IMG/VR virus record: IMGVR_UViG_3300022752_000015
Coordinates: 148,805 to 212,804 of that record
DNA: 64,000 bases
Strand: one strand, 5' to 3'
In this document: piece by piece, positions 51,403 to 64,000 of the stretch
Layout: every line of letters begins with the position of its first letter
Position numbering within the stretch: the stretch's first letter is position 1
Position numbers and translations under genes: made by a program
The notes under the pieces: generated by a model
What the model saw: the letters and a program-made list of their open reading frames with translations, nothing else
Told to the model about the DNA's origin: nothing
Database searches by the model: none

Positions 51403-51405
51403 CAG

Positions 51406-51477
51406 CGATCCCAGGGGGAATTGAACCCCCGCAAGCGCCTTGAAAGGGCACTGTCCTAACCTCTAGACGATGGGACC
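51406..51477 (-). tRNA. tRNA-Glu(TTC), CCA not encoded
   Basis: Minus strand reads GGTCCCA...GTGCC-CTTTCAA-GGCGC...GGTTCAATTCC...TGGGATC-G and folds as a cloverleaf. Confidence 0.92.
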
Positions 51478-53926: not shown

Positions 53927-54227
53927 TTTTCACCAATTTTCTATGAGACTCTAGATCTTGTAACAAGTCAGAGATTCCACTTTGGAACAACGGAGATTTC
54001 GAAATCATCTCAGCTGATTCAGAATCGACGTGAATGTTATGCTGATCTGCTATTGCATCAACAAACTTGCGCATGACTCGAAGTACGTAATTCCTCGCTG
54101 AGGAATGGTTCATTTTATACCCAAGCTCTGTCATTGTATCCGCAATATCACGATAATTAACACCATTATCGTCAATTGTTGCGTAACCACCAACAAATTT
54201 GCTACCTTTTTTCATTGTCATTGTCAT
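53913..54227 (-). CDS. Putative HTH DNA-binding protein
   Basis: NYRDIADTM...MNHSSARN HTH-like pattern. Confidence 0.55.
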   Translation of the reverse strand: MTMTMKKGSKFVGGYATIDDNGVNYRDIADTMTELGYKMNHSSARNYVLRVMRKFVDAIADQHNIHVDSESAEMISKSPLFQSGISDLLQDLESHRKLVKNESN

Positions 54228-54462
54228 TTTTCCTATGAAATGTCTCGCCCCTAGAATGAGGTACCATTGATGGACCGAATCTGGTCGTCTGCAAGTATCG
54301 CAATCGTGAATTTAAGTTCCGTTCGACCAGCAGATCTTCTTTTACGTCTTCTTCCTCCTCAATTTCATCAGATTTTTTGTCACGGATCAACGTGTACAAA
54401 CTAACAAAAGAAGTGATCAGATTGATCGAACATAGGACAAGAATCAGACTTTCGCTGGTCAC
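54202..54462 (-). CDS. Small protein with N-terminal membrane anchor
   Basis: Hydrophobic N-terminus followed by an acidic patch; overlaps the sigma stop. Confidence 0.55.
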   Translation of the reverse strand: MTSESLILVLCSINLITSFVSLYTLIRDKKSDEIEEEEDVKEDLLVERNLNSRLRYLQTTRFGPSMVPHSRGETFHRKNDNDNEKR

Positions 54463-55292
54463 GTGAGACCTTCTCCCGTTGAGATCTTCTCAACTTGCTC
54501 TTGAGTGATCTTATAAGATTCATCGCTCAACACATCGTCGACCAGCCCGAACCGCAACCTCAAAATCGCAGCTTCCTTTGGAGAAAGGCCCACGATGACT
54601 CGTTGAGCCAACTCTAACATTTGCTTGGAAGAAAAAATCTCGAGTGGATCTGACGTAGGATCCGCCTCAATCTTATCTTCAATCGTGTCAGCATCTGGAT
54701 CTGAGGACAGAGGTTGATCAAGCGAAATAATCGATCGACCACTGATCCTCATCGCATTGAAGATTGCATCTGAAGTGCCTGTCAACTCCTTCAACTCTTC
54801 AGGAGTTGGCTCACATCCCATCGCGTTCCTGTATTCTTCGGCGGCTGTCAACAACTTCTTTTGAGTATTCACGGCATGCGCGGACATTCTGATGACCCGC
54901 TTCTGCTTCAGGATGTGTTGACCAATCGCTTGCCTAACCCACCAGGTCGCGTAGGTCGAGAACCTAAATCCCTTCTTCCAATCAAACTTCTCAATCGCTC
55001 GCATCAACCCCATGTTGCCTTCTTGAATGATGTCTTCGAGAGGCATGCTGTGGTTCTTGTACTGCTTCGCCACGTAAACGACCAAACGTAGATTGGCCTC
55101 GATCAACTTTTTCTTCGCAATTGCCGCGTCAGATCCTCCTGCTTCGAGAATCTTAAAGAGCTCCATCATCTGTTCGTGCGAAAGCTGCTGGTGATTCTTT
55201 AGAGAAGAAAAGTAGCGATTCATTGAATCGCCGCCGAAGGCTGACTCTCGAGAGTTTTCTCGAGAAATTGTGCCTTGAGAACTCAAATTCAA
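54459..55292 (-). CDS. RpoD/RpoS-like sigma-70 factor
   Basis: LIEANLRLVV, DIIQEGNMGLMRAIEKFD..KGFRFSTYATWWVRQAI, SLD and ILRLRFGL motifs. Confidence 0.92.
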   Translation of the reverse strand: MNLSSQGTISRENSRESAFGGDSMNRYFSSLKNHQQLSHEQMMELFKILEAGGSDAAIAKKKLIEANLRLVVYVAKQYKNHSMPLEDIIQEGNMGLMRAIEKFDWKKGFRFSTYATWWVRQAIGQHILKQKRVIRMSAHAVNTQKKLLTAAEEYRNAMGCEPTPEELKELTGTSDAIFNAMRISGRSIISLDQPLSSDPDADTIEDKIEADPTSDPLEIFSSKQMLELAQRVIVGLSPKEAAILRLRFGLVDDVLSDESYKITQEQVEKISTGEGLT

Positions 55293-55570
55293 TCCTCCTC
55301 CGTGACGGAAACAGCCGAAACATACTTTGCGTGGGCCTCACGACGAGCTGTTCGAATCTGCAGCTCTCGTTGTACATAACACATCTCAACCTCCCATGCG
55401 GAAGGATTCAACCCATGACTATTCACCCTAGCGATGGAATCCGTCAGCGATCGCTGCATATTGTTCAATGAATCGTCGTCGATGATAGCCAGCTCATCAA
55501 ACGTGTGCACCTGAGGAAAAGGAATCGGGGAATCAACGTTGATCTTGTTTGTCTTTGCTTTCTTTGCCAT
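55289..55570 (-). CDS. Hypothetical protein coupled to sigma gene
   Basis: 93-aa ORF overlapping the sigma start. Confidence 0.6.
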   Translation of the reverse strand: MAKKAKTNKINVDSPIPFPQVHTFDELAIIDDDSLNNMQRSLTDSIARVNSHGLNPSAWEVEMCYVQRELQIRTARREAHAKYVSAVSVTEED

Positions 55571-55652
55571 TTTTTTCTCACTTTCGTGCGTTCATCAAAT
55601 CCAGGGAACAAATTCTTTTTATACCATGCAACATTAACATTGCACTGGAAGA

Positions 55653-56588
55653 TTAAAGGGGCACATCAAATTTCTTAGGCATCTCGAGGACAGCGAGATT
55701 TTTCATCTTCGCCTCCACCTCTAGATCCACTGCATCGCGCCGCAGGCGCTCGAGCTGCACCGCAGGAATATAATGGATCATGTCGCTGTGCTTGCGCCGC
55801 TCGGTGAAAGATCCACCCTCCATGCCTGGCTCAGTGTTGCTGATGTGTTGCAGGGGTTTCACACCTTTAGGCCACGTCTCATCGGCTGCGTCCGCAGCCT
55901 CTGCGCCGTCCAATCCATCGTCGTTGAAAACATGATGATGCGAATCCCACACGATCGGCACACCCGTCTCCATCGACACCGGCAACAGATCCACCAACGA
56001 ATAGCACGTCTCGCAATTCTCCAGCGTCAATCGCGATCGACTAGCCTCAGGCAATGACCGAATCGCGTCGATCAGCCTCGTCTGCCGATCCGCCTTACCA
56101 CCATGCACGTTGATCGCGGCGTACGGACTCCGCGGCATCCCCATCGAATCAAACATCCACGCGTGATGCTCGAGCTCGACGATCGACTTCTCAACCACCG
56201 AGTCAGAATCCGACGACAACACGCAGAACTGACCCGGATGCGTCGTCAACCGAACGCCATGCTTCCTCGCCACCTCACCACACATCGCCAGCTCTCGCTT
56301 GAGAACATCGTTGTCCCACAATCCCCGAGGCACGCGATCATTCAACGGAAACATGGCGCTCGACACGCGAAACAACCGCACGCCACTCGCTGCCACCTTC
56401 CGTAACACGTCTCGCAACATTCGAGCATTGTGAAGGTACAACGATCGAATCGCATCCTCAGAGTATGCACCCCGCTCATATCGACCCAATTGCAACGTCT
56501 TCTCCTCCAACTCGTTGATGACCTGCAACTTGCCGCTCCGCGGCGCATTCTCGTGCCTAATCCAATGACAACAGACACCTAGTGCCAT
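55653..56588 (-). CDS. uvsE: UV-damage endonuclease
   Basis: FRVSS.MFP, HPGQF..LSS, NVHGG, LENCE, DSHHH, HSD and EVEAKMK motifs. Confidence 0.92.
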   Translation of the reverse strand: MALGVCCHWIRHENAPRSGKLQVINELEEKTLQLGRYERGAYSEDAIRSLYLHNARMLRDVLRKVAASGVRLFRVSSAMFPLNDRVPRGLWDNDVLKRELAMCGEVARKHGVRLTTHPGQFCVLSSDSDSVVEKSIVELEHHAWMFDSMGMPRSPYAAINVHGGKADRQTRLIDAIRSLPEASRSRLTLENCETCYSLVDLLPVSMETGVPIVWDSHHHVFNDDGLDGAEAADAADETWPKGVKPLQHISNTEPGMEGGSFTERRKHSDMIHYIPAVQLERLRRDAVDLEVEAKMKNLAVLEMPKKFDVPL

Positions 56589-56654
56589 AAGCTTGTGTAT
56601 ACCTTAATCCCTTAAGGCCACTTGTACAACAAACCACGTCCTCTATGCACCACG

Positions 56655-56690
56655 GGCCACATGAATTATTCCTGGATAATTCATGTGGCC
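56655..56690. repeat. Perfect 15-bp inverted repeat
   Basis: GGCCACATGAATTAT-TCCTGG-ATAATTCATGTGGCC. Confidence 0.85.
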
Positions 56691-56718
56691 TTCTACACAG
56701 ACGATTATTACAGTTTAT

Positions 56719-57093
56719 TCAGGTGCCACCGAAGGCGTCATCCACCACGTCCATCATGGTGCGATCGTCTCGAGAATCTCCCTTCAAGACGTCAATCTTC
56801 GTACGTGCCGCGGCGGCGGCCCAGCGCACGACCACCTCTCCTGGCTCTCTGAGAGACAACTCGACGAATGCCCCCGTCTCAGGATCGCTCAACCTCGCAA
56901 TGGTTCCATCACGCATCCCATCTAGATCAGGACCCATGTCGTACACGAGATCAGGATTGGTCGCGGCCTCGTCTGCCAATATCTCCATCACCGGCTCAGC
57001 CACAAGCCTCCACTGAATCTCTTCGGCCCCTCCGGTCAACGACTCAAACTCTTCTCTAATGATCTGTTTCAATCTCGGCAACGTCAACTTCAT
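56719..57093 (-). CDS. Small protein with MKLTLPRLKQIIREE N-terminus
   Basis: GGAG SD before ATG 57093; shared motif. Confidence 0.7.
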   Translation of the reverse strand: MKLTLPRLKQIIREEFESLTGGAEEIQWRLVAEPVMEILADEAATNPDLVYDMGPDLDGMRDGTIARLSDPETGAFVELSLREPGEVVVRWAAAAARTKIDVLKGDSRDDRTMMDVVDDAFGGT

Positions 57094-57368
57094 ACTAACT
57101 CCAGTACATATATATATCACGCTATACATCGTCTACCGGAGAAGTCGACGAAACGGTGCCAACAATGCCCCAATGATCAATCGAAACACCGAAGCCACGA
57201 ACATCCTCTCAAACATCCGACCATATTTCATCCGCATCTCATCACCTCAGCACCCATGGTACGTCGCTCCAGCTGCGAAGAACAACGGTCATTTCGACGC
57301 AAAAAATTTCCCGAGAAATTTTCGAGCACCACAACAGCTCCAGAAAATCCGCGGAGCCGGAACTCAGT

Positions 57369-57551
57369 TCACAACCTTTTTAGAAAGGCTATGTACTCGA
57401 AGTCAACCGTCCCGTCGTTGCACAGGAAGATTCCCTCATCCGGCTGTTCATCGAGATGATACAGGAACACCAAGACTCGATCCAAGATCTCTCTCGGTGC
57501 CACGCCATCATCTTCGTAGACGCACAGATCTCCGGGGCTGAGCTTTAACAT
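57369..57551 (-). CDS. Small hypothetical protein
   Basis: 60-aa ORF, same orientation as neighbours. Confidence 0.4.
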   Translation of the reverse strand: MLKLSPGDLCVYEDDGVAPREILDRVLVFLYHLDEQPDEGIFLCNDGTVDFEYIAFLKRL

Positions 57552-57878
57552 GCTTATAAATAGGCATGTGCCCCCACGAGTGTGGGTAATGACCGTTTCA
57601 ATCTCAAAATTTCTCGAGATTTGCGCGCGGGTTTAGCGCTCCCCGGAGGCCCCAAAAACCCCACAGAAAATGCCCCTTTTGGGGGCGGGGCCGGGGCCCC
57701 ATTTTAGGGGCCTAAAGAGGGGCCCTTCGAGGGGCCCTTGCAAGGGGGCTGCCCCTCCGCCCGATTGCTGTCTCCTCGGGCCCCCTTGTATTTCAACCTT
57801 GCAGCAGGCCCCACCGCAGAACCCAGCCGATCGCTGCTCCGATGATTGCTCCTTCGGCGAAGGCCGCCGCGTGATCCT

Positions 57879-58244
57879 TCAGCAGCCCTCCTTGAGGAGT
57901 CGGAAGAACTTCTTCGGAGCCGACGGCCCGATACCGAGCTTGAGGAGGAGGGGGAAGGCCGCAAGCTTCTCGTTGAGCTGCGCCGTCTTCTCCGAGATCT
58001 CGCTGATGAGCGAGCCGTTCGTCGGAGGAGACATGTGCGACCCACCGTCCCTGACGTAGGTGGCGAAGGAGGTGCAGCTCTTGGCGAGCCTCTCGGCGCA
58101 GTCGGCAAGATCCTCGCGCAGCTGGTCGATCTTGCAGGCCGCCTCACGGACCTCCAGGAAGGCGGCCGTGCTCGCGAGGTACATCAGGCCGAGCGACTTG
58201 ATGGTAGCTTCCAGGGTGGACTCGTACTTGCCGGGGTTCTTCAT
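57879..58244 (-). CDS. Array unit protein, 121 aa, hypothetical
   Basis: ATG belongs to element 58242-58280; reads MKNPGKYE... Confidence 0.7.
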   Translation of the reverse strand: MKNPGKYESTLEATIKSLGLMYLASTAAFLEVREAACKIDQLREDLADCAERLAKSCTSFATYVRDGGSHMSPPTNGSLISEISEKTAQLNEKLAAFPLLLKLGIGPSAPKKFFRLLKEGC

Positions 58245-58297
58245 GGTCCTAGTATACCCTTTCTCAAATGAACTTTGCACCGACGGGACGAACTTTT

Positions 58298-58483
58298 TCA
58301 GCCCCACTGTTTGGGGATGGCGAGCCGCAGCTTCTCGAGGATGTCACCGTAGGCGGTCAGTTCCTCGGCATCGAATTCGCTCAAGGCCGCGCGGATCCGT
58401 TTCGCCTCCTCGAGGGAGAGGTAGAGGTTGATGCCGTCTTCCTTGGTGCCGGTGGGGGAGGTGGCGGTCCGGGTGATCTTCAT
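58298..58483 (-). CDS. Array unit protein, 61 aa
   Basis: ATG of element 58481-58519. Confidence 0.7.
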   Translation of the reverse strand: MKITRTATSPTGTKEDGINLYLSLEEAKRIRAALSEFDAEELTAYGDILEKLRLAIPKQWG

Positions 58484-58523
58484 GGTTCTACCTTATCCTG
58501 TTCTGGGGTGACTTTGCACCGGA

Positions 58524-58700
58524 TCAGAGGATGGGATCGACCCCTTCGATCAAGGGGTAGTAGGAGACCTGGATTCCGTGGTAGCCGGCGTCGTAGAGCT
58601 TTTGGGCTTCCTTGACGATTCGCGACTGGCGGACTTGTTTCCGCCCGGGCTTGCCCTTGGGGGTGAAGTAGGCGATCTCGTAGATGGCTTCGTTCTTCAT
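58524..58700 (-). CDS. Array unit protein, 58 aa
   Basis: ATG of element 58698-58736; reads MKNEAIYE... Confidence 0.7.
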   Translation of the reverse strand: MKNEAIYEIAYFTPKGKPGRKQVRQSRIVKEAQKLYDAGYHGIQVSYYPLIEGVDPIL

Positions 58701-58751
58701 GGTCCCAGTATATCCTTTCCTCGTTGAACTTTGCACCGATCCGCGAACTTT

Positions 58752-58937
58752 TTACACACCCATCTCTTCGAGGGCGTCCTGGCGCAGGATGTCGGTCACC
58801 TCCTCGCGGAGGTCCTTCCGGGCCGCCAGCTCCCAGAGGGAGGCGGTGAGGTTGGCCTGCATCTCGTGGTCGATCTTCCCCGCGGTGAGGAGATCGGTCA
58901 CCTGGGCGATGAGCTGGGCGATGTGTTTGGCGTCCAT
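58752..58937 (-). CDS. Array unit protein, 61 aa
   Basis: ATG of element 58935-58973; reads MDAKHIAQ... Confidence 0.7.
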   Translation of the reverse strand: MDAKHIAQLIAQVTDLLTAGKIDHEMQANLTASLWELAARKDLREEVTDILRQDALEEMGV

Positions 58938-58973
58938 GGCCTCAGTATACCCTTTCGAGGAGGAACTTTGCAC

Positions 58974-59147
58974 TCAGCCGTTGAGCTTTTCGCCGATCCG
59001 GGCCTTGAGTTCCTCGAGGGCGACCCGGTCCCGGAGATCCTTGAGGGCAACCAACTCCTCCTTCCAGTCGGGATCACCGTTGTAGGTCTCGATCTGGGTC
59101 ACGAGTGCCTCATAGAGGCGATTGAGGTCGATCTCGTCGAATTCCAT
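58974..59147 (-). CDS. Array unit protein, 57 aa (not in ORF track)
   Basis: Reads MEFDEIDLNRLYEALV...GEKLNG*; its TGA abuts the next element. Confidence 0.7.
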   Translation of the reverse strand: MEFDEIDLNRLYEALVTQIETYNGDPDWKEELVALKDLRDRVALEELKARIGEKLNG

Positions 59148-59183
59148 GGTTCTACCTTACCTCGTTCAGGTGTGACTTTGCAC

Positions 59184-59354
59184 TCAGTAGGGAAGATTCT
59201 CCAGGTGCTCGATGAGCTTCACCTGGAGCTTGAGGAGCGACCGGTAGTCAGGATCGTCGCGGAGGTCGATGGAGGTGTCCAGACGCATCCTCTCCCGGAC
59301 GGAGTCGAGGCCTTCGAGGATGAGCTTCGTTTCGGAGCGGGAGAGGTGTTCCAT
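59184..59354 (-). CDS. Array unit protein, 56 aa (not in ORF track)
   Basis: Reads MEHLSRSETKLILEGL...ENLPY*; its TGA abuts the next element. Confidence 0.7.
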   Translation of the reverse strand: MEHLSRSETKLILEGLDSVRERMRLDTSIDLRDDPDYRSLLKLQVKLIEHLENLPY

Positions 59355-59394
59355 GGTTCTAGTATACCTCGTTCAGGGGTGACTTTGCACCGAC

Positions 59395-59607
59395 TCAGGC
59401 CCGGTTCAGGATCCGGTCGGCAGCCCGAGCTGTCATGATGTCCCGCCCACCGAGCCCGATTCGGTTGGCCTTGCGGACCGCGGCGGCGATGGAGGTCGAC
59501 CCGAAGTACCAGCCGACCGGGATGCAGTCTTCCTTGGAGAAGCCGTAGTAGGCCACGGCGGCGTAGAGGTAGGTGCGACGTGAGGGCTTCTTGGAGGTGG
59601 TCTTCAT
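59395..59607 (-). CDS. Array unit protein, 70 aa, basic
   Basis: ATG of element 59605-59643. Confidence 0.7.
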   Translation of the reverse strand: MKTTSKKPSRRTYLYAAVAYYGFSKEDCIPVGWYFGSTSIAAAVRKANRIGLGGRDIMTARAADRILNRA

Positions 59608-59648
59608 GGTTTTACCTTATCCTGTTCGTGGTTGACTTTGCACCGGGT

Positions 59649-59735
59649 TCAGGCGGCCATCATCCACCAGGCCGCGAAGGCCGTGGAAGCGACGGTGACG
59701 ATGGCTCCGAGGATGTCAGCTGCGGCGTTCTTCAT
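59649..59735 (-). CDS. Array unit peptide, 28 aa, single hydrophobic helix
   Basis: Reads MKNAAADILGAIVTVASTAFAAWWMMAA* from element 59733-59771. Confidence 0.6.
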   Translation of the reverse strand: MKNAAADILGAIVTVASTAFAAWWMMAA

Positions 59736-59753
59736 GGTCCTAGTATATCCTAT

Positions 59754-59930
59754 TCAGATGTGACTTTGCACCGACGCAGGAGGAACCAACTCCTCCGGCA
59801 CCACATTCTCTGGAGTCAAGACGTGACCACGGTAAAATGGCTGGAGCAACACGATGGCTCCCTCGACGGTCCGCGCCCGGACACACTCGCCGGTCTCGAC
59901 GTAGACCCACCACTTCGTCTTGGTCTTCAT
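59754..59930 (-). CDS. Array unit protein, 58 aa
   Basis: Reads MKTKTKWWVY...; its 3' end runs into the next element. Confidence 0.65.
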   Translation of the reverse strand: MKTKTKWWVYVETGECVRARTVEGAIVLLQPFYRGHVLTPENVVPEELVPPASVQSHI

Positions 59931-59995
59931 GCCACCAGTATATCCTTTCCCGGCGGAACTTTGCACCGACCTGGGAACTTTTTCTCAGATCACCC

Positions 59996-60076
59996 AGGAT
60001 GCCCTTGGGGAGGCCGGAGGCAATTCGACCTAGGTTACCCCATTCCTAGATCCAAGAACCTCCCCAAGGGCATCCT
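59996..60076. repeat. Hairpin element copy 1 (18-bp arms, conserved core GACCTAGGTTACCCCAT)
   Basis: AGGATGCCCTTGGGGAGG (59996-60013) pairs with CCTCCCCAAGGGCATCCT (60059-60076); core at 60027-60043. Confidence 0.85.
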
Positions 60077-60093
60077 AGGGGTTCAGGCGTGGG

Positions 60094-60837
60094 TCAGAAC
60101 TTCTCTGCCGGGACCCACTGGACGTTACCTGCCGAGTCCTTCACCCCTGCCCGGGCGTTCCACTTGCCGCGGTACTTGGAGACGCCGATCCAGAAGACCT
60201 TGCCGGTGAAGCCGTCGACTGTGACCGTGGTGCCCTTGGCAGGGATCCGGGCCAGCTGACCCTCAGCCACCGCCTTCTCGGCCTGGAGCTTGGCGTCACG
60301 CTTAGCCTGGCGGGCGTCCTTCTTCGCCTTCTCGGCGGCGGCGATGGCAGCCTGCTCAGCGCGTTTGGCCGCCCGTTCCGCCTCGATGCGGGCCATCCGG
60401 GCCGTGTGGAATGCCTCCCAGGCGGCACATCCGTCGAGCATCTCAGGACCACCGTGGAGGAGCTGCATGTCGAAGGGATCGACCGTGGCCGACAGCGAGT
60501 AGCCGTTGCGGTCGGAGAAGAGGTTGGTGCAGTCCACCCAGGCGAACTGTTCGTGGACCTCGAGATCGCGGACCTTGTCGGCATCCCACTTGAGGGCATC
60601 GATGTAGGCGAGGATCCGCTCACCGGCGTAGTGGTGCGGGCTGGGAGGGACGTTGCAGGTGCCGAGCCAGACGAGGGCCCAGGTGCACTCAGTCGAGCGG
60701 TGGTCCGAGTAGTCGAGGGTGTCCGACCAGTTGCGGGTCTCCGTCGTCTTCTCGATCCGCAGGACGCGGTGCTGGAAGAAGACCTCCGACGTGGAGGGGC
60801 CGGGACCGTAGGCGTAGCTCTTCTTGATGATCGGCAT
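60094..60837 (-). CDS. Array unit protein, 247 aa, with Ala/Lys helix and C-terminal SH3-like domain
   Basis: ATG of element 60835-60873; C-terminus contains KGTTVTV..TGKVFWIG. Confidence 0.75.
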   Translation of the reverse strand: MPIIKKSYAYGPGPSTSEVFFQHRVLRIEKTTETRNWSDTLDYSDHRSTECTWALVWLGTCNVPPSPHHYAGERILAYIDALKWDADKVRDLEVHEQFAWVDCTNLFSDRNGYSLSATVDPFDMQLLHGGPEMLDGCAAWEAFHTARMARIEAERAAKRAEQAAIAAAEKAKKDARQAKRDAKLQAEKAVAEGQLARIPAKGTTVTVDGFTGKVFWIGVSKYRGKWNARAGVKDSAGNVQWVPAEKF

Positions 60838-60888
60838 GGTTCTACCCTATCCTGTTCAGGGTCGACTTTGCACCACCGCCGCACTTTT

Positions 60889-61131
60889 TCAGTCGTCGTC
60901 CACCCCGAAGGTGGAGAGGGGCTCTTCCTCCTCTTCGTCCTCACCCAACTCTTCCTCCTCCTCGTCCTCGTCGATCTCTGCATCCTCCTCCTCGAGGAAC
61001 CCCTCACCCACTGCCATCTCGGCTACGTCGGCCTCCGACATGAAGGTCAGGCAGGCCCTCACGAGCACCTCGGCGTCCAAGGCACCCTCTTCCATCATCT
61101 CCAGCAGCTTGTTCGTAACTCGTCGCGTCAT
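60889..61131 (-). CDS. Array unit protein, 80 aa, extremely acidic
   Basis: ATG of element 61129-61167; about 40% Asp/Glu. Confidence 0.75.
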   Translation of the reverse strand: MTRRVTNKLLEMMEEGALDAEVLVRACLTFMSEADVAEMAVGEGFLEEEDAEIDEDEEEEELGEDEEEEEPLSTFGVDDD

Positions 61132-61170
61132 GTTGTTACCTTATCTTGTCGGGGGTTGACTTTACACTGC

Positions 61171-61557
61171 TCAGGGGAGGGGCTTGAACTCGGGACCCTT
61201 GCCGAAGACCTCACGGTCTGCGTAGTGCCAGCTGTAGGTAGTCCCTCGCTCGTCCCCCGGCCGAAAGAGGTAGACGAACTCGTAACCACCGTCGTCGAAG
61301 CGGATGCTGCTCGCCTGGGTGTAGGTGGCGATGTCGAGTTCCTCACCACGGTCGCGGTGGTAGGCCTGCGTGTAATCCAGGTCCTCACCGAGCGACGACA
61401 AGCAACCGAGCGCCACGAGGTCGAGCACCTGACGGACCGTCGTGTAGTGTGCTTTGAGGGTGGCACCGACGCCTTTGAGGTAGCCGTCGTGGTGGCAGTA
61501 GACGCCGGTGACAGTGCCGTCGAGGTTCTGGATGCCGATGAAAGAGCGAGTGGACAT
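61171..61557 (-). CDS. Phage hypothetical protein (MSTRS.IG...YCH.DGY...VG..L..HY type), 128 aa
   Basis: AGGAG SD before ATG 61557; the motif pattern recurs in phage proteins, function unknown. Confidence 0.75.
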   Translation of the reverse strand: MSTRSFIGIQNLDGTVTGVYCHHDGYLKGVGATLKAHYTTVRQVLDLVALGCLSSLGEDLDYTQAYHRDRGEELDIATYTQASSIRFDDGGYEFVYLFRPGDERGTTYSWHYADREVFGKGPEFKPLP

Positions 61558-61594
61558 GAGGTTCTCCTGGACGAGGGTTGGTGGCCGGATTGGT

Positions 61595-61621
61595 TCAGAT
61601 GCCGATCTTGATCGTTTCCAT
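61595..61621 (-). CDS. 8-aa leader micro-ORF (METIKIGI)
   Basis: ATG of element 61619-61657, with a stop at codon 9. Confidence 0.4.
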   Translation of the reverse strand: METIKIGI

Positions 61622-61651
61622 GGTTCTACTCTATCAGGTCGTTGAGGAACT

Positions 61652-62383
61652 TTACACTGCCTCTGTGCGACGAATTGCGACCGTCGGGGGAAGGGTACCA
61701 TCCCCACACCCGTACACCCGGATCGAATAGTTGGCGATTTCCTTGGGGTAACCCCTTCGGTCAGCCCGGCGGATGTGACGGAATCGATAGGTCCCAGGAT
61801 CCGGATACTTCCCAGTCATAGAAATGTAGGTCGGGGTGAGACGTAGAGTGCGGGAGCTTCCTCCGATGCGGAGACCCTTGAAGGCCGCATCGCCGAGCGT
61901 GTCATAGATCTGCTTACCAACGAGCTGCTCTGCAGTCCGTTGTGTCCTCTCGACCACCTGTGCGGGTGACTCCATGGTCAAAGTGATCTTCTGGGGCAAC
62001 ATTGTTGTCAGCATCTCCCCCAGCATGGCAACCATCGAGACCATGTTTTCCCGCCGCTTCAACGTCTCCAGGTCCATGTCGCCACCTGAGGTCGCCACTG
62101 CGATGCGGAGGTAGTTATCCAACACCATGGCACCTTCCTCATTGAGCTGTGCCCCCTTCGGGTCCGAGTTGTAGACGACGACCAGCGTGACGGAGGGGTT
62201 GGACTCGTGCCACGCGCTCCTCGTGGGATCCAGGTTGAAGTCGTACCGAATCCCCGTCGAGCCCTCCGTCACCTCCCGAGCGAGCACGTCTTGGTTGTAC
62301 TTGTTCATGTGCGCGACCACACCGTGAGAGCCGATGATGGCCTTGGCGGTGCGGAGGGCTTCGATCCGGGGTGTGGCGTCCAT
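61652..62383 (-). CDS. Array unit protein, 243 aa
   Basis: ATG of element 62381-62419; its TAA lies inside the GTGTAAAG of the next element. Confidence 0.75.
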   Translation of the reverse strand: MDATPRIEALRTAKAIIGSHGVVAHMNKYNQDVLAREVTEGSTGIRYDFNLDPTRSAWHESNPSVTLVVVYNSDPKGAQLNEEGAMVLDNYLRIAVATSGGDMDLETLKRRENMVSMVAMLGEMLTTMLPQKITLTMESPAQVVERTQRTAEQLVGKQIYDTLGDAAFKGLRIGGSSRTLRLTPTYISMTGKYPDPGTYRFRHIRRADRRGYPKEIANYSIRVYGCGDGTLPPTVAIRRTEAV

Positions 62384-62419
62384 GGTTCTACCTTACCTCA
62401 TTCGTCGTGCGCTTTGCAC

Positions 62420-62638
62420 TCAGGTCACACCCCGCCGTGACAGTTCGATGCCGAGGAGCTTGTAGGCCGTGCGCCAGTTGCGGTGGCGGGCCCGGGCGAG
62501 GACTTGGGTGCCGGTGTCCACCTCGACGTGGAAGTCTCCCTTGACGCGGACGCTGCGGACCTCAAGGGGCGTGCCCTCACTGACGCAGAAGGAAGCAAGT
62601 TCGAGAACCTTTGCCTTGGGAGAGGAGTTGCGCTTCAT
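62420..62638 (-). CDS. Array unit protein, 72 aa, basic
   Basis: ATG of element 62636-62674; its TGA abuts the next element. Confidence 0.7.
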   Translation of the reverse strand: MKRNSSPKAKVLELASFCVSEGTPLEVRSVRVKGDFHVEVDTGTQVLARARHRNWRTAYKLLGIELSRRGVT

Positions 62639-62679
62639 GGTTCTAACTTACCTTGTTTGAGGTTGACTTTGCACTGCCT

Positions 62680-62952
62680 TCAGCCAACCGCGAGAGAAAG
62701 TGCGCAGTAGCGGCCGTCGGGCAGAGTACCTTCGTAGTTGAGGCTGACGTTACCCTCGCCATCGTCGGCGATCTCGACGAAGTTGAAGGCGACAACCTTG
62801 CCCGTCCGGTGGCTGCGGACTGCGACCTTGGCCGGAGCACGACCACTTTGGGGGAAGTCAATGTGGTCGCTGACCGACCCCATACCGTGAGCGGCCTTGG
62901 CGTTGTACCAGTCGAACTTCGAACCGTCGAGGATGATCGGGAAGGTGTTCAT
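62680..62952 (-). CDS. Array unit protein, 90 aa
   Basis: Reads MNTFPIILDG... from element 62950-62988. Confidence 0.7.
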   Translation of the reverse strand: MNTFPIILDGSKFDWYNAKAAHGMGSVSDHIDFPQSGRAPAKVAVRSHRTGKVVAFNFVEIADDGEGNVSLNYEGTLPDGRYCALSLAVG

Positions 62953-63005
62953 GGTCTCAGTATATCCTTTCGAGGTTGAACTTTGCACTGGATGGGTTGG
63001 GGTTT

Positions 63006-63344
63006 TCAGCCGCCGTCGGCCATGCGCATGGCGGCGTAGGCGTCGGCCGGTTTGGCGGGCTTCTTGCGCTTGGCCTTGCGTTGAGCTGCCCGATCCGCGG
63101 CCGCCGAGGCGGCCGGGTTGCAGACGGCCTTCTCCTTGCCGACGGAGTAGAGGATGTTGTCCCCTGGTTGGAATGGGCCGCTGAGGACCACGACGTCGCC
63201 GTCCTCGAGCTGTCCTGCTCGGGCGGCCATTGCGAGTTTGTCGAAGGCTGCGCGGGCTGCCGGCTCGCTGAGGAAGACGTGCTGGGCGGCGGAGCCTTCG
63301 TAGGAGACCAGGACCGAGACGACGTAGATTCCGATGTTCTTCAT
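63006..63344 (-). CDS. Array unit protein, 112 aa
   Basis: Reads MKNIGIYVV... from element 63342-63380; basic C-terminal tail. Confidence 0.7.
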   Translation of the reverse strand: MKNIGIYVVSVLVSYEGSAAQHVFLSEPAARAAFDKLAMAARAGQLEDGDVVVLSGPFQPGDNILYSVGKEKAVCNPAASAAADRAAQRKAKRKKPAKPADAYAAMRMADGG

Positions 63345-63384
63345 GGTTGTAGTATACACTTTCGAGGTTGAACTTTGCACGGAC

Positions 63385-63594
63385 TCAGTACAACTTTCGG
63401 CCGTGGGACAGGACCTCCGCCGCTCGAGCGAATGCCCTCGACAGAATCTCACATTCGGCACGGTTGAGGTACAGGGTGGCGGTGCCTCCGGAATCCTTGT
63501 CCGGACACCGGCCCTTGTGCTCGTCTCCCCGGACCGTCTGGACCAGGTCGAGGCGGAGGATGTCGTTGATGATGTCGAGGGGGTCGCGGTCCAT
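63385..63594 (-). CDS. Array unit protein, 69 aa
   Basis: Reads MDRDPLDII... from element 63592-63630. Confidence 0.7.
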   Translation of the reverse strand: MDRDPLDIINDILRLDLVQTVRGDEHKGRCPDKDSGGTATLYLNRAECEILSRAFARAAEVLSHGRKLY

Positions 63595-63648
63595 GGTCCT
63601 AGTATACCCTTTCTGCTGGGAACTTTGCACCGGGTGGAGAACTTTTTT

Positions 63649-63837
63649 TCAGACGTCCGAAGCGATCTGCGCCAGGAAGTGGGCGAGCGTCGAGGCATCG
63701 TCGTTCTGGAGGGTGATCGAGAAGCTCGGCCCGAACACGATCCGCGTCGTGTAAGGCAGCGGACCTTCCTCCACCTCGATGCGGTACTCGCGGGAGGTGT
63801 CTGCGTCGACGACCGTGAGCTTCTTGATGTGATCCAT
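63649..63837 (-). CDS. Array unit protein, 62 aa
   Basis: Reads MDHIKKLTV... from element 63835-63873. Confidence 0.7.
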   Translation of the reverse strand: MDHIKKLTVVDADTSREYRIEVEEGPLPYTTRIVFGPSFSITLQNDDASTLAHFLAQIASDV

Positions 63838-63904
63838 GGTCCTAGTATACCCTTTCCACTGTGAACTTTGCACTGACGGTCGCGCTTTTTTTCGCGATCC
63901 CCTG

Positions 63905-63983
63905 GGATGACCCAGGAGAGGTCGGGGAATGCCGGACCTAGGTTACCCCATCCGACCCCACGGTAGCCTCTCCTGGGTCATCC
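63905..63983. repeat. Hairpin element copy 2 (17-bp arms, same core)
   Basis: GGATGACCCAGGAGAGG (63905-63921) pairs with CCTCTCCTGGGTCATCC (63967-63983); core GACCTAGGTTACCCCAT at 63935-63951. Confidence 0.85.
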
Positions 63984-64000
63984 TCAGGCCCAGGACCTGG

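What the first reader, a model, noticed from the sequence alone, without database searches (positions are those of the whole stretch)
57879..63873. Array of 18 one-promoter-one-gene cassettes, each headed by a fixed 39-bp element that predicts leaderless mRNA
Seen: 18 minus-strand elements are all exactly 39 nt from GTGYAAAG to the end of ATG, e.g. GTGCAAAGTTCATTTGAGAAAGGGTATACTAGGACCATG and GTGCAAAGTCACCCCAGAACAGGATAAGGTAGAACCATG. The layout is TGYAAA, 17 nt, TAnnnT (mostly TATACT or TAAGGT), 6 nt, ATG. Each element heads an unrelated ORF, mostly 28-121 aa, with two of about 245 aa and one micro-ORF. Several have an AAAAAGT(T) tract about 10-12 nt further upstream. Established: -35/17/-10 is sigma70 geometry, transcription usually starts about 6-7 nt after -10, and upstream A-tracts act as UP elements. 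Repeated early promoters are known in phage host-takeover regions (SPO1, T4-like PeSLs). Inference: every gene has its own strong promoter and an mRNA beginning at AUG. The result is a modular library of immediate-early effector cassettes, and the shared element may also provide homology for cassette gain, loss and shuffling. The strict one-to-one design combined with leaderless starts is the unusual part.
Basis: partly seen in the sequence, partly recalled or inferred. Interest (0 to 1): 0.85.

Follow-up and report, generated by a model that had tools for sequence, protein, structure and literature searches.

The report
Leaderless promoter-gene cassette array in phage
A roughly 286-kb uncultured freshwater T4-type phage carries a run of small genes, each headed by the same 39-base promoter-like element ending on the start codon; this probably yields messages with no leader, and relatives show genes being swapped by recombination inside that element.

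Summary
Eighteen 39-nt elements lie on the minus strand between 57879 and 63873 (0.05 expected by chance) and none lie elsewhere in the window. The window is the last 64 kb of a 212.8-kb IMG/VR contig from a T4-type jumbo phage.

About 310 further copies occur in 20 related contigs. The box-to-(-10) spacing is fixed, and the ATG sits 7 nt after TANNNT in about 82% of copies.

The cassette ORFs are real genes: dN/dS has a median of 0.22 and homologues align from Met1.

Leaderless starts are supported indirectly. When the same promoter sits 18-59 nt from a gene, an SD appears in 78% of cases, against 17% when the ATG is at the canonical position.

Cassette shuffling is supported directly. Relatives differ by single-cassette indels and replacements, and two junction elements are clear crossover chimeras.

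This is a leaderless, mostly stem-loop-free variant of the PeSL cassettes of T4-type phages, so it is a new variant of a known kind. Leaderless phage transcripts are already known from Thermus phages.

Three points remain untested: the real 5' ends, the temporal class ("immediate-early") and any "effector" role. The invariant upstream box GTGCAAAGT matches TTGACA poorly, so what reads it is open.

Side finding: cassette genes have GC3 of about 0.85, against about 0.25 in the structural genes of the same contig.

The parts
63904..63984 (-). 81-nt hairpin (AGGATG...GGGGTAACC...CATCC), 30 nt upstream of element 1
   Evidence: Fold energy -74.9 kcal/mol, z -6.3. Compensatory stem changes relative to the second copy.
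63835..63873 (-). Element 1 (subtype A); heads W1, 62 aa (63837-63649)
   Evidence: homologues at 84-85% aa, dN/dS 0.28
63592..63630 (-). Element 2 with upstream AAAAAAAGTTC tract; heads W2, 69 aa (63594-63385). No homologue found among the cassettes of the fetched contigs.
   Evidence: part of the W2-W3 insertion
63342..63380 (-). Element 3; heads W3, 112 aa (63344-63006). No homologue found among the cassettes of the fetched contigs.
62950..62988 (-). Element 4; heads W4, 90 aa (62952-62680)
   Evidence: 90% aa homologues, dN/dS 0.15
62636..62674 (-). Element 5 (subtype B, TAAGTT); heads W5, 72 aa (62638-62420)
62381..62419 (-). Element 6 (TAAGGT); heads W6, 243 aa (62383-61652)
61619..61657 (-). 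Element 7 (GTGTAAAG, TAGAGT); heads the 8-codon micro-ORF METIKIGI (61621-61595)
   Evidence: the micro-ORF is nucleotide-identical in 4 of the 5 other contigs that carry it and differs by one synonymous base in the fifth
61171..61557 (-). SD-led 128-aa gene (family f4 / phrog_1987) behind the micro-ORF. It is the only gene in the array without its own leaderless element.
   Evidence: CAGGAGAAC-N3-ATG. In 6 other contigs the homologues start M-[AS]-T-[RH]-[SC]-[FY]-I-G at the element's ATG. PHROG and T4-like gene-cluster hits.
61129..61167 (-). Element 8 (GTGTAAAG, TAAGGT); heads W8, 80 aa, very acidic (61131-60889)
60835..60873 (-). Element 9; heads W9, 247 aa (60837-60094), the most widespread cassette family
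   Evidence: structure model and weak fold hits
59996..60076 (-). Second copy of the 81-nt hairpin, 29 nt upstream of element 10; splits the array into two nine-cassette blocks
   Evidence: Fold energy -69 kcal/mol, z -5.6; alignment and pair counts
59928..59966 (-). Element 10; heads W10, 58 aa (59930-59754). Its stop codon lies inside element 11.
   Evidence: present or absent between relatives, with a chimeric junction
59733..59771 (-). Element 11 (5' half subtype B, -10 of subtype A); heads W11, a 28-aa hydrophobic peptide (59735-59649)
59605..59643 (-). Element 12; heads W12, 70 aa (59607-59395)
59352..59390 (-). Element 13; heads W13, 56 aa (59354-59184)
59145..59183 (-). Element 14; heads W14, 57 aa (59147-58974)
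58935..58973 (-). Element 15; heads W15, 61 aa (58937-58752)
58698..58736 (-). Element 16 with upstream AAAAAGTTC; heads W16, 58 aa (58700-58524)
58481..58519 (-). Element 17; heads W17, 61 aa (58483-58298)
58242..58280 (-). Element 18 with upstream AAAAAGTTC; heads W18, 121 aa (58244-57879). W18 is the last cassette of the array in five of the related arrays too; in 3300016471_000965 its homologue lies mid-array.
57640..57864 (-). GC-rich non-coding block closing the array: several hairpins and one canonical terminator (stem 57686-57672 followed by a T-run)
   Evidence: 93.5% identical to contig 3300044641_009805, although the adjacent W18 is only 72% identical

Best explanation
The region is the distal half of a hyperplastic 'small-gene' region of an uncultured freshwater T4-type jumbo phage of about 286 kb. 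Each cassette is one compact promoter fused to one gene. The promoter has an invariant 9-bp upstream box (GTGCAAAGT, about -36 to -28), a 15-bp spacer, a -10 box of the TANNNT type with flanking G's (GNTANNNTNG), and six more bases (usually AGGACC or AGAACC). The A of the ATG then sits where RNA polymerase normally starts. Each gene is therefore expressed mainly from its own transcript beginning at AUG, which ribosomes translate without a Shine-Dalgarno site. A leaderless start needs a 5'-terminal AUG, so one promoter per gene follows from this translation mode; it is not an extra design feature. There are no terminators between most cassettes, so transcripts are probably nested and 3'-coterminal. 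They would end at the two large hairpins or at the terminator block after W18. Internal cistrons mostly lack an SD, which insulates each gene translationally from its neighbours. The 39-57 bp of shared sequence also acts as portable homology. The phage's own recombination system (a gp46/47-like SbcCD is present in the window) crosses over between elements, which inserts, deletes and replaces single cassettes. Shown here: the anatomy, its conservation, that the ORFs are real genes, that the ATG is the start codon, the SD contrast, and the chimeric junctions.
For: Count and geometry. Family-wide: anchoring only on GTGYAAAG gives 354 unique sites in relatives; 307 have TANNNT at exactly the same offset, and 251 of those have ATG exactly 7 nt after it. 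There are 312 cassettes in 21 multi-copy contigs, window included, with a median of 73 aa. Real genes: 14 of 18 window cassettes have element-headed homologues at 33-98% aa identity; dN/dS is 0.04-0.53, with a median of 0.22 over 125 pairs and all below 1. True start codon: six f4 homologues begin at the element's ATG, and 80% of 241 homologous pairs align from within the first 6 residues. Leaderless versus leadered: none of the 18 has GGAG/GAGG at 4-10 nt. Across the family an SD-like core occurs in 17% of 248 canonical cassettes and in 78% of 36 cases with a leader of at least 18 nt; in the leadered cases the base 7 nt after the -10 is a purine in 34 of 36. The window's own leadered gene has CAGGAGAAC. 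No intrinsic terminators lie between cassettes, and one lies after W18. The -10 region fits the actinobacterial extended -10 GNTANANTNG (PMC3917453). The -10-to-ORF geometry matches tested leaderless promoters in Deinococcus-Thermus (PMC12340547) and mapped 5' ends in Thermus phage Lalka27a. Shuffling: cassette order, breakpoints, chimeric junction elements. Context: T4-type core genes. Conserved synteny array-UvdE-sigma-ligase in 4 other assemblies, with core proteins 96-100% identical to contig 3300044641_009805 (one uncertain neighbouring ORF 73%) while cassettes are 54-98% identical or replaced.
Against: There are no transcript data, so promoter activity and 5' ends are inferred. The upstream box matches TTGACA at 3 of 6 positions, and an E. 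coli-type scan does not call it. Near-invariance of nine bases is more than a host -35 usually shows. The loci were fetched with a pattern that required the geometry, so the family percentages are partly ascertained; the contrast between classes and the anchor-only analysis reduce this bias but do not remove it. About 29% of the -10 variants (TAAGGT, TAGGAT) contain an SD-like core 7 nt from the ATG, so some cassettes could also be translated from read-through RNA. The host is unknown. Breakpoints at intergenic elements are also what any gene-by-gene replacement would give; only the two chimeras point specifically to crossover inside the element.
Confidence: 0.68

Rival explanations
1. The anatomy and leaderless output are the same, but the invariant upstream box is read by a phage-specified factor instead of region 4 of the host primary sigma. 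This factor could be an activator or sigma-appropriation pair like T4 MotA/AsiA, or a virion-delivered protein. The cassettes would then be a phage-controlled class (middle, or factor-dependent early) and would not be immediate-early.
For: The box GTGCAAAGT is nearly invariant over nine bases in phages whose sigma and UvdE proteins are only 50-66% identical. It resembles TTGACA poorly. T4-type phages are known to use a box near -30 plus TANNNT for middle promoters (my own knowledge of MotA-dependent promoters). Phage-specific late -10 variants in Thermus phages were interpreted the same way.
Against: No MotA- or AsiA-like gene was identified, though only 64 kb of about 286 kb was inspected. 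The phage's own sigma lacks a recognisable region 4.2, so it is an unlikely reader of a -35-position box. T4 early promoters are also unusually conserved and deviate from the host consensus (own knowledge). An upstream A-tract at a fixed position in 24% of elements fits host alpha-CTD contact.
Confidence: 0.2
2. The elements are not promoters. The array is transcribed as long polycistronic RNA from upstream, and the repeat is a translation or 'start-associated' signal (like the SAS of Cluster K mycobacteriophages) or an operator for a regulator (like the stoperators of L5-type phages).
For: The repeat sits immediately upstream of start codons. Some variants contain AAGG or AGGA 7 nt from the ATG. 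There are no terminators between cassettes.
Against: In 36 family members the same element lies 18-59 nt from the start codon. There a separate SD appears, and a purine sits exactly 7 nt after the TANNNT. So the element is tied to a transcription-start geometry and not to the start codon. Most canonical cassettes (83%) have no SD-like core. The bipartite layout with a fixed 15-bp spacer and TANNNT conservation limited to T1, A2 and T6 is the signature of a sigma70-family promoter. The phage is a T4-type lytic myovirus, and no repressor context was seen.
Confidence: 0.06
3. The repeat is primarily the recombination site of a dedicated cassette-mobilising system (integron-like or homing-like), and its resemblance to a promoter is secondary.
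For: Cassette-level indels have both breakpoints in the repeat. A conserved hairpin accompanies some copies. The PeSL authors raised a similar possibility of a helper protein (PMC2839356).
Against: The two mapped crossovers lie at different positions within the element (in the box, and between the -10 and the ATG). That fits homologous recombination and not a fixed cleavage site. No integrase or recombinase was seen near the array. This model does not explain the strict register to the ATG or the TANNNT.
Confidence: 0.04

Closest known systems
PeSL (promoter-early stem-loop) cassettes in hyperplastic regions of T4-type phages (Arbiol et al. 2010, PMC2839356; Comeau et al. 2014, PMC4122927)
   Same: The host genome is a T4-type myovirus. 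The repeated element is a conserved promoter-bearing intergenic sequence heading small ORFan genes clustered in a plastic region. An A-rich tract lies upstream of the -35 position. Single-cassette indels and replacements separate close relatives. Crossovers map inside the element, including between the -10 and the ATG. A stem-loop plus promoter composite exists at some junctions.
   Different: There is no Shine-Dalgarno site or leader: the ATG sits at the predicted start site. Only 2 of 18 junctions carry a stem-loop, which is a large 81-nt hairpin with a conserved loop instead of a short polyG/polyC stem. The -35-position box does not match the sigma70 consensus. The element is shorter (39-57 bp against about 100 bp). 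The cassettes are GC-rich (GC3 about 0.85) in an AT-rich genome. Mini-circles, promoter activity and terminator activity were shown experimentally for PeSLs and were not tested here.
Leaderless transcription programmes of Thermus phages phiYS40 and Lalka27a (Sevostyanova et al. 2007 as summarised in PMC3594737; bioRxiv 10.64898/2026.04.20.719267)
   Same: [quoted passage not shown]
   Different: Those phages are unrelated in gene content as far as tested. In phiYS40 the leaderless class is middle/late. No tandem cassette array with an invariant upstream box, and no cassette shuffling, has been described there.
-10-adjacent-to-ORF leaderless promoters of Deinococcus-Thermus (PMC12340547) and the sigmaA promoters of Corynebacterium (TTGNCA / GNTANANTNG, PMC3917453)
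   Same: A TANNNT -10 at a fixed short distance from the ORF. A -35 at 17 bp enhances expression. The flanking G's of the extended -10 match.
   Different: Those are host chromosomal promoters with weak or absent -35 boxes. Here an invariant non-consensus 9-bp box is present in every copy.
SPO1 host-takeover module and T4 early-gene clusters
   Same: Clusters of small early genes of unknown function driven by many repeated strong promoters.
   Different: Those genes have strong Shine-Dalgarno sites and several genes per promoter.
Start-associated sequences (SAS) of Cluster K mycobacteriophages (own knowledge)
   Same: A repeated motif lying just upstream of many start codons.
   Different: SAS is a 13-bp single motif without -35/-10 architecture. 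Here the element can sit 18-59 nt from the start codon and is then followed by a separate SD.

Membership tests
PeSL cassettes of T4-type phages | Located in a T4-type phage genome, clustered in a hyperplastic region rich in small ORFans | tested here: met
   Gp23, portal, TerL, gp46/47-like and PhoH genes are present. Cassette proteins have no Pfam or PHROG family except f4. Core proteins are 96-100% identical to a relative while cassettes are 54-98% identical or replaced.
PeSL cassettes of T4-type phages | Contains a sigma70-consensus early promoter with an AT-rich upstream region | tested here: inconclusive
   The -10 and the spacing fit. The upstream box matches TTGACA at only 3 of 6 positions and is not called by the consensus scan. 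An A-tract is present in 24% of copies. Activity was not tested.
PeSL cassettes of T4-type phages | Contains a stem-loop acting as a terminator in each element | tested here: not met
   Only 2 of 18 junctions have a hairpin. The other junctions leave 0-18 nt between the stop codon and the next element. No terminators lie between cassettes.
PeSL cassettes of T4-type phages | Shine-Dalgarno site between the -10 and the ATG (leadered mRNA) | tested here: not met
   The ATG lies 7 nt after the -10 in all 18, and none has GGAG/GAGG.
PeSL cassettes of T4-type phages | Recombination between elements causes cassette indels and replacements between close relatives | tested here: met
   Cassette-order differences, block ends at elements, chimeric junction elements. 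Mini-circles are not testable here.
Leaderless (-10-adjacent ORF) promoters | TANNNT -10 with the start codon's first base at the usual start-site distance (six intervening bases) | tested here: met
   18 of 18 in the window. In relatives, 251 of 307 elements that have the -10 at the fixed offset.
Leaderless (-10-adjacent ORF) promoters | Transcript 5' end coincides with the start codon | not testable with these tools
   No RNA data. Indirect support comes from the SD contrast.
Leaderless (-10-adjacent ORF) promoters | The annotated ATG is the real translation start | tested here: met
   Homologues align from Met1.
T4 MotA-dependent middle promoters | MotA box (TGCTT core) centred at -30, 11-13 bp from the -10, with MotA and AsiA genes in the genome | tested here: not met
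   The box sequence is GTGCAAAGT and lies 15 bp from the -10. No MotA- or AsiA-like hit among the window proteins scanned. Only 64 kb of the genome was inspected.
Cluster K mycobacteriophage start-associated sequences | Short single motif fixed 3-8 bp upstream of start codons, independent of promoter architecture | tested here: not met
   The layout is a bipartite box/-10 arrangement. In 36 copies the element lies 18-59 nt from the start codon with a separate SD.
Integron-type gene cassettes | Site-specific recombination site plus a dedicated integrase; cassettes lack their own promoters | tested here: not met
   No integrase was found near the array. Crossovers occur at different positions in the element. 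Each cassette carries its own promoter-like element.

The most novel reading that the evidence does not exclude
The array is a self-contained leaderless expression-cassette system. A dedicated phage factor, not the host sigma's region 4, reads the invariant 9-bp upstream box. Leaderless starts replace terminators as the means of insulating mobile cassettes. The genome speaks two codon dialects split by temporal class: the early cassettes, and partly the major capsid gene, are tuned to a high-GC host (GC3 about 0.85), while the rest of the genome drifts to GC3 about 0.25.
Probability: 0.2. Interest if true: 0.8.

Novelty: new variant of a known kind. Interest (0 to 1): 0.6.

Why it matters
It extends the PeSL idea beyond enterobacterial and Vibrio T4-type phages to a deep-branching uncultured freshwater lineage. 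In that idea, repeated promoter elements double as recombination linkers that let large phages swap small accessory genes. The two chimeric junctions are unusually clean.

It also offers a rationale for one promoter per gene: leaderless translation requires it. A leaderless cassette is translationally insulated wherever it lands, which may make it an especially portable module.

The 39-nt element is a ready-made, testable minimal promoter-plus-start unit for hosts that translate leaderless mRNA well.

The extreme codon split within one genome is a separate, striking observation. It bears on how AT-rich phages cope with GC-rich hosts.

Tried and rejected
- **Assembly chimera.** The jump from 32% to 60% GC is real. 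The same array-UvdE-sigma-ligase synteny occurs in four other assemblies.
- **Known phage relatives.** INPHARED gave no nucleotide match for the array, no match for W9, and no multi-copy match to the elements.
- **Known RNA families.** Rfam found nothing for the hairpins or the terminal block.
- **Cassette function.** There were no Pfam hits. PHROGs hit only f4, of unknown function. The W9 model (pLDDT 74) gave only weak SH3/Tudor-like matches, with the CarD/Mfd RNAP-interacting domain at E about 0.2 and no sequence-profile support. I did not adopt this.
- **Host identification.** Atlas look-ups of UvdE and sigma were uninformative. The genome-collection scan found multi-copy hits only on short contigs binned into MAGs of discordant phyla, which are probably mis-binned phage. 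An exact look-up of W9 found nothing.
- **Archaeal TATA/BRE reading.** Rejected: the genome has a sigma70-family gene, T4-type bacterial-phage core genes, SD use and a TANNNT box.
- **Phage sigma as reader of the box.** Disfavoured because region 4.2 is missing.
- **Second promoter class.** TATAAATA is not enriched, and no other repeated upstream 8-mer was found.
- **phiYS40 primary paper.** It could not be read, so I relied on secondary summaries.

Full report
**1. The observation.**
The pattern TGYAAA-N17-TANNNT-N6-ATG occurs 18 times in the window. All copies are on the minus strand between 58242 and 63872. Shuffles give 0.05 expected, and none of 100 reached 18. A weight matrix built from the 18 copies finds nothing else on either strand of the 64 kb. 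Every copy is exactly 39 nt from the G of GTGYAAAG to the G of ATG.

Translating from each ATG gives ORFs of 62, 69, 112, 90, 72, 243, 8, 80, 247, 58, 28, 70, 56, 57, 61, 58, 61 and 121 aa. The stop codon of one cassette lies 0-18 nt from the next element in 13 junctions. Two ORFs end inside the next element. The two larger gaps hold an SD-led gene and a hairpin.

Two subtypes are visible. One reads GTGCAAAGTTC...GAAAGGrTATACTrgGACC. The other reads GTGCAAAGTCA...GAACrgGaTAAGGTAGAACC. Mixed forms also occur.

An E. coli-type consensus scan does not call any of the elements, because the upstream hexamer matches TTGACA at only 3 of 6 positions. The same scan finds no terminators between cassettes.

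**2. Where the window comes from.**
Composition is heterogeneous: 32-37% GC up to about 44 kb, mixed from 44 to 57 kb, and 60% in the array.

The window encodes a T4-type core: Gp23 major capsid protein, portal, large terminase, helicase, gp46/47-like SbcCD and PhoH. It also encodes UvdE, an ATP-dependent DNA ligase, a sigma70-family protein and a tRNA-Glu. The capsid protein is only 35-47% identical to those of uncultured huge phages, Microcystis, Flavobacterium and Rhodothermus phages.

A pattern scan of IMG/VR returned 86 loci. One of them, L018, is bases 202,889-212,804 of the 212,804-bp contig IMGVR_UViG_3300022752_000015 and corresponds to window 54085-64000. So the window is the last 64 kb of that contig.

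The terminal 127 nt of the window are 100% identical to the end of a 73-kb contig from the same sample. The assembly broke at the repeated hairpin/promoter. The array therefore continues upstream, and the genome is about 286 kb, similar to a 278-kb relative.

The order array, UvdE, orf93, sigma..., ligase recurs in four other assemblies. The GC jump is therefore real and is not a chimera.

**3. The element family.**
I anchored only on the 8-mer GTGYAAAG in the related loci. Of 354 unique sites, 307 have TANNNT at exactly the same offset. Of those, 251 have ATG exactly 7 nt after it. The loci were fetched with a pattern that required this geometry, so these fractions are partly ascertained.

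Twenty-one contigs from 16 samples, counting the window's own contig, carry three or more strict copies, up to 30 per contig. Together they give 312 cassette ORFs with a median of 73 aa.

Within the -10 box only T1, A2 and T6 are fixed. TATACT, TAGGAT, TAAGGT and TATAGT dominate, and TATAAT occurs twice in 312. A G two bases upstream and a G two bases downstream are favoured. This gives GNTANNNTNG, which is the extended -10 reported for Corynebacterium sigmaA promoters (PMC3917453).

An upstream AAAAGT(T) tract is present in 24% of copies, at a fixed position 15-16 nt before the element.

No deposited phage genome carries the element. In the genome collection it occurs in multiple copies only on short contigs binned into freshwater MAGs of discordant phyla, which are most likely mis-binned phage.

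**4. Are the ORFs genes, and is the ATG the start?**
Fourteen of the 18 window cassettes have homologues at 33-98% identity in other contigs, each again headed by the element. Pairwise dN/dS is 0.04-0.53 for the window cassettes. The median is 0.22 over 125 cross-contig pairs, and none exceeds 1.

In 241 homologous pairs of 30-85% identity, 80% align from within the first six residues of both proteins. Six members of family f4 begin M-[AS]-T-[RH]-[SC]-[FY]-I-G at the element's ATG.

**5. Leaderless or not?**
There is no RNA evidence. The indirect case rests on an internal control.

When the first long ORF starts 5-8 nt after the -10 (n=248), an SD-like core at 4-11 nt is found in 17% of cases. 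Most of these come from -10 variants that happen to contain AGGA.

When the same promoter sits 18 nt or more upstream (n=36), 78% have an SD. In those, the base 7 nt after the -10 is a purine in 34 of 36.

The window itself shows both modes. Seventeen cassettes have no GGAG/GAGG. The f4 homologue behind the micro-ORF has CAGGAGAAC-N3-ATG. So the phage uses an SD when there is a leader and omits it when the ATG sits at the predicted start site.

The geometry equals that of experimentally tested leaderless promoters in Deinococcus-Thermus (PMC12340547). It also equals that of mapped 5' ends in Thermus phage Lalka27a, which were reported as similar to phiYS40.

One caveat: TAAGGT and TAGGAT variants place an SD-like core 7 nt from the ATG. 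These variants could allow some translation from read-through RNA.

**6. Transcription-unit structure.**
Two 81-nt hairpins lie 29-30 nt upstream of elements 1 and 10, at 63984-63904 and 60076-59996. They fold at -75 and -69 kcal/mol (z about -6).

Ten copies from six contigs share a 20-bp basal stem. It is kept through compensatory changes at 4-5 positions, has G.U pairs that work only on the sense strand, and carries a conserved GGGGTAACC apical motif. The hairpins have no U-tract and no Rfam match. I infer that they are attenuators or 3'-end stabilisers that split the array into two blocks of nine.

After W18 comes a conserved GC-rich block with one canonical terminator.

Within a block, transcripts are probably nested and 3'-coterminal. 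Only the first cistron of each transcript has a 5'-terminal AUG, so each gene's output would depend on its own promoter.

**7. Cassette shuffling.**
Cassette order in the window is W1 [W2 W3] W4 W5 W6 uORF/f4 W8 W9 W10 W11 [W12-W17] W18. The closest relatives differ as follows.

- **3300035703_000516:** the part of the array that was recovered reads W1 W4 W5 W6 uORF, so W2 and W3 are absent.
- **3300044641_009805:** a W18 paralogue sits between W1 and W4, W10 is absent, and a different set of cassettes lies between W11 and W18.
- **3300042453_005804:** W10 is kept, but W17 and another cassette lie upstream of W5.
- **More distant contigs:** the same families appear in other orders.

Nucleotide homology blocks end in or within a few bases of an element in about two thirds of cases, although elements cover about 16% of the region.

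Two junctions are explicit chimeras.

- The single element between W1 and W4 in 3300035703_000516 matches window element 2 in its flank and box, and element 4 from the spacer onward.
- The element heading W11 in 3300044641_009805 matches element 10, with its hairpin, up to the -10, and element 11 from there to the ATG.

Core proteins of 3300044641_009805 are 96-100% identical to the window's, apart from one uncertain ORF next to the array at 73%. The shared cassettes are 54-98% identical, and the others are replaced.

**8. Comparison with what is known.**
The closest described system is the PeSL of T4-type phages. A PeSL is a conserved early promoter plus stem-loop that flanks ORFans in hyperplastic regions. 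It was shown to act as promoter and terminator and to recombine, with crossovers mapped for instance between the -10 and the ATG (PMC2839356; PMC4122927).

The present array shares the phage type, the location, the ORFan cargo, the A-rich upstream tract, the cassette indels and the crossover positions. It fails two PeSL features: it has no SD or leader, and most junctions have no stem-loop. Its -35-position box is also not the sigma70 consensus. I therefore call it a PeSL-like system in a leaderless form and do not file it as a PeSL.

Leaderless phage transcripts are themselves known, from phiYS40, Lalka27a and lambda cI. Tandem early promoters are known from SPO1 and T4.

**9. What stays open.**

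The phage's own sigma aligns to RpoD models only as far as the start of region 4 and lacks region 4.2, so it is an unlikely reader. The candidates are the host primary sigma or an unidentified phage factor.
- **Timing and function.** The only functional hints are a very acidic 80-aa protein (W8), a 28-aa hydrophobic peptide (W11), and a weak CarD/Mfd-like barrel in W9.
- **The host.** The leaderless geometry, the GNTANNNTNG -10 and GC-rich early genes point to a high-GC host. I could not name it.

**10. Side finding.**
Cassette genes have GC3 of 0.75-0.92. Structural genes in the first 44 kb have 0.16-0.35. Values decline through the genes next to the array (UvdE 0.68, sigma 0.56, ligase 0.43), and the major capsid gene stands out at 0.61. 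Cassettes in relatives show the same high GC3. I found no paper describing such a split.

Possible causes are codon adaptation of early and highly expressed genes to a GC-rich host, GC-biased gene conversion in a recombination-prone region, or import from a GC-rich cassette pool.

**Verdict.**
The promoter/leaderless reading is well supported indirectly. The shuffling idea is supported directly. The labels 'immediate-early' and 'effector' are unproven. This is a new variant of a known kind, in a previously undescribed phage lineage.

Noticed in passing
whole window; cassettes 57879-63837 versus structural genes 1-44000: There is an extreme codon-composition split inside one phage contig. GC3 is 0.75-0.92 in the cassette genes and 0.16-0.35 in the structural genes. 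Values decline next to the array (UvdE 0.68, sigma 0.56, ligase 0.43), and Gp23 is 0.61. Cassettes in relatives are likewise GC3-rich.
   Followed up: partly
63904-63984 (-) and 59996-60076 (-); L010, L011, L023, L027, L037, L057, L074: An 81-nt hairpin family has an AGGATG/CATCCT basal stem, compensatory changes, sense-strand G.U pairs and a conserved GGGGTAACC apex. It always lies 20-30 nt upstream of an element, and it heads different cassettes in different phages. It has no Rfam match.
   Followed up: partly
61595-61621 (-): The 8-codon micro-ORF METIKIGI is nucleotide-identical in 4 of the 5 other contigs that carry it; the fifth differs by one synonymous base. In one contig it precedes a different gene. 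Its peptide resembles the N-terminus of the f4 gene that follows it (MSTRSFIGI). It may be a recombination scar or a regulatory upstream ORF. A second micro-ORF, MERNGAAR, heads the divergent array in relatives.
   Followed up: partly
63874-64000 and L057:10695-10821: The window's last 127 nt are 100% identical to the end of a 73-kb contig from the same sample. The assembler broke at the repeat. The genome is about 286 kb, and the array continues with at least seven more co-directional cassettes plus a divergent four-cassette arm.
   Followed up: yes
54462-55292 (-): A phage-encoded RpoD-like sigma factor (277 aa) has regions 1.2-3 but no recognisable region 4.2. It is conserved at 50-98% identity in four relatives, about 2.6 kb downstream of the array.
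   Followed up: partly
57401-57864: The non-coding GC-rich block after the last cassette is 93.5% identical to a relative, although the neighbouring gene W18 is only 72% identical. It contains several hairpins and one canonical terminator. Any function beyond termination is unknown.
   Followed up: no
60094-60837 (-): The W9 model has an N-terminal beta domain, a helix of about 70 residues, and a confident C-terminal small barrel. Its nearest PDB folds are the CarD/CdnL and Mfd RNA-polymerase-interacting domains, at E about 0.2. There is no sequence-profile support.
   Followed up: partly
L090, L092, L095, L099-L101, L100 (genome collection): Short contigs full of these phage elements are included in representative MAGs labelled Proteobacteria, Gammaproteobacteria, 'bacterium', Ca. 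Aquidulcis (Chloroflexota) and Bdellovibrionota. This is probably phage contamination of the bins.
   Followed up: no
L080/L073 region of contig 3300044641_009805 (between its W1 and W4 homologues): A paralogue of W18 sits at a different array position. It is headed by a 40-nt variant of the element, with one extra base and TATATA in place of TANNNT.
   Followed up: no
55653-56588 (-) and 51405-51477 (-): The phage carries a UV-damage endonuclease gene (UvdE) and a tRNA-Glu(UUC). No T4-type late-promoter motif (TATAAATA) and no other repeated upstream 8-mer was found for the AT-rich genes.
   Followed up: no
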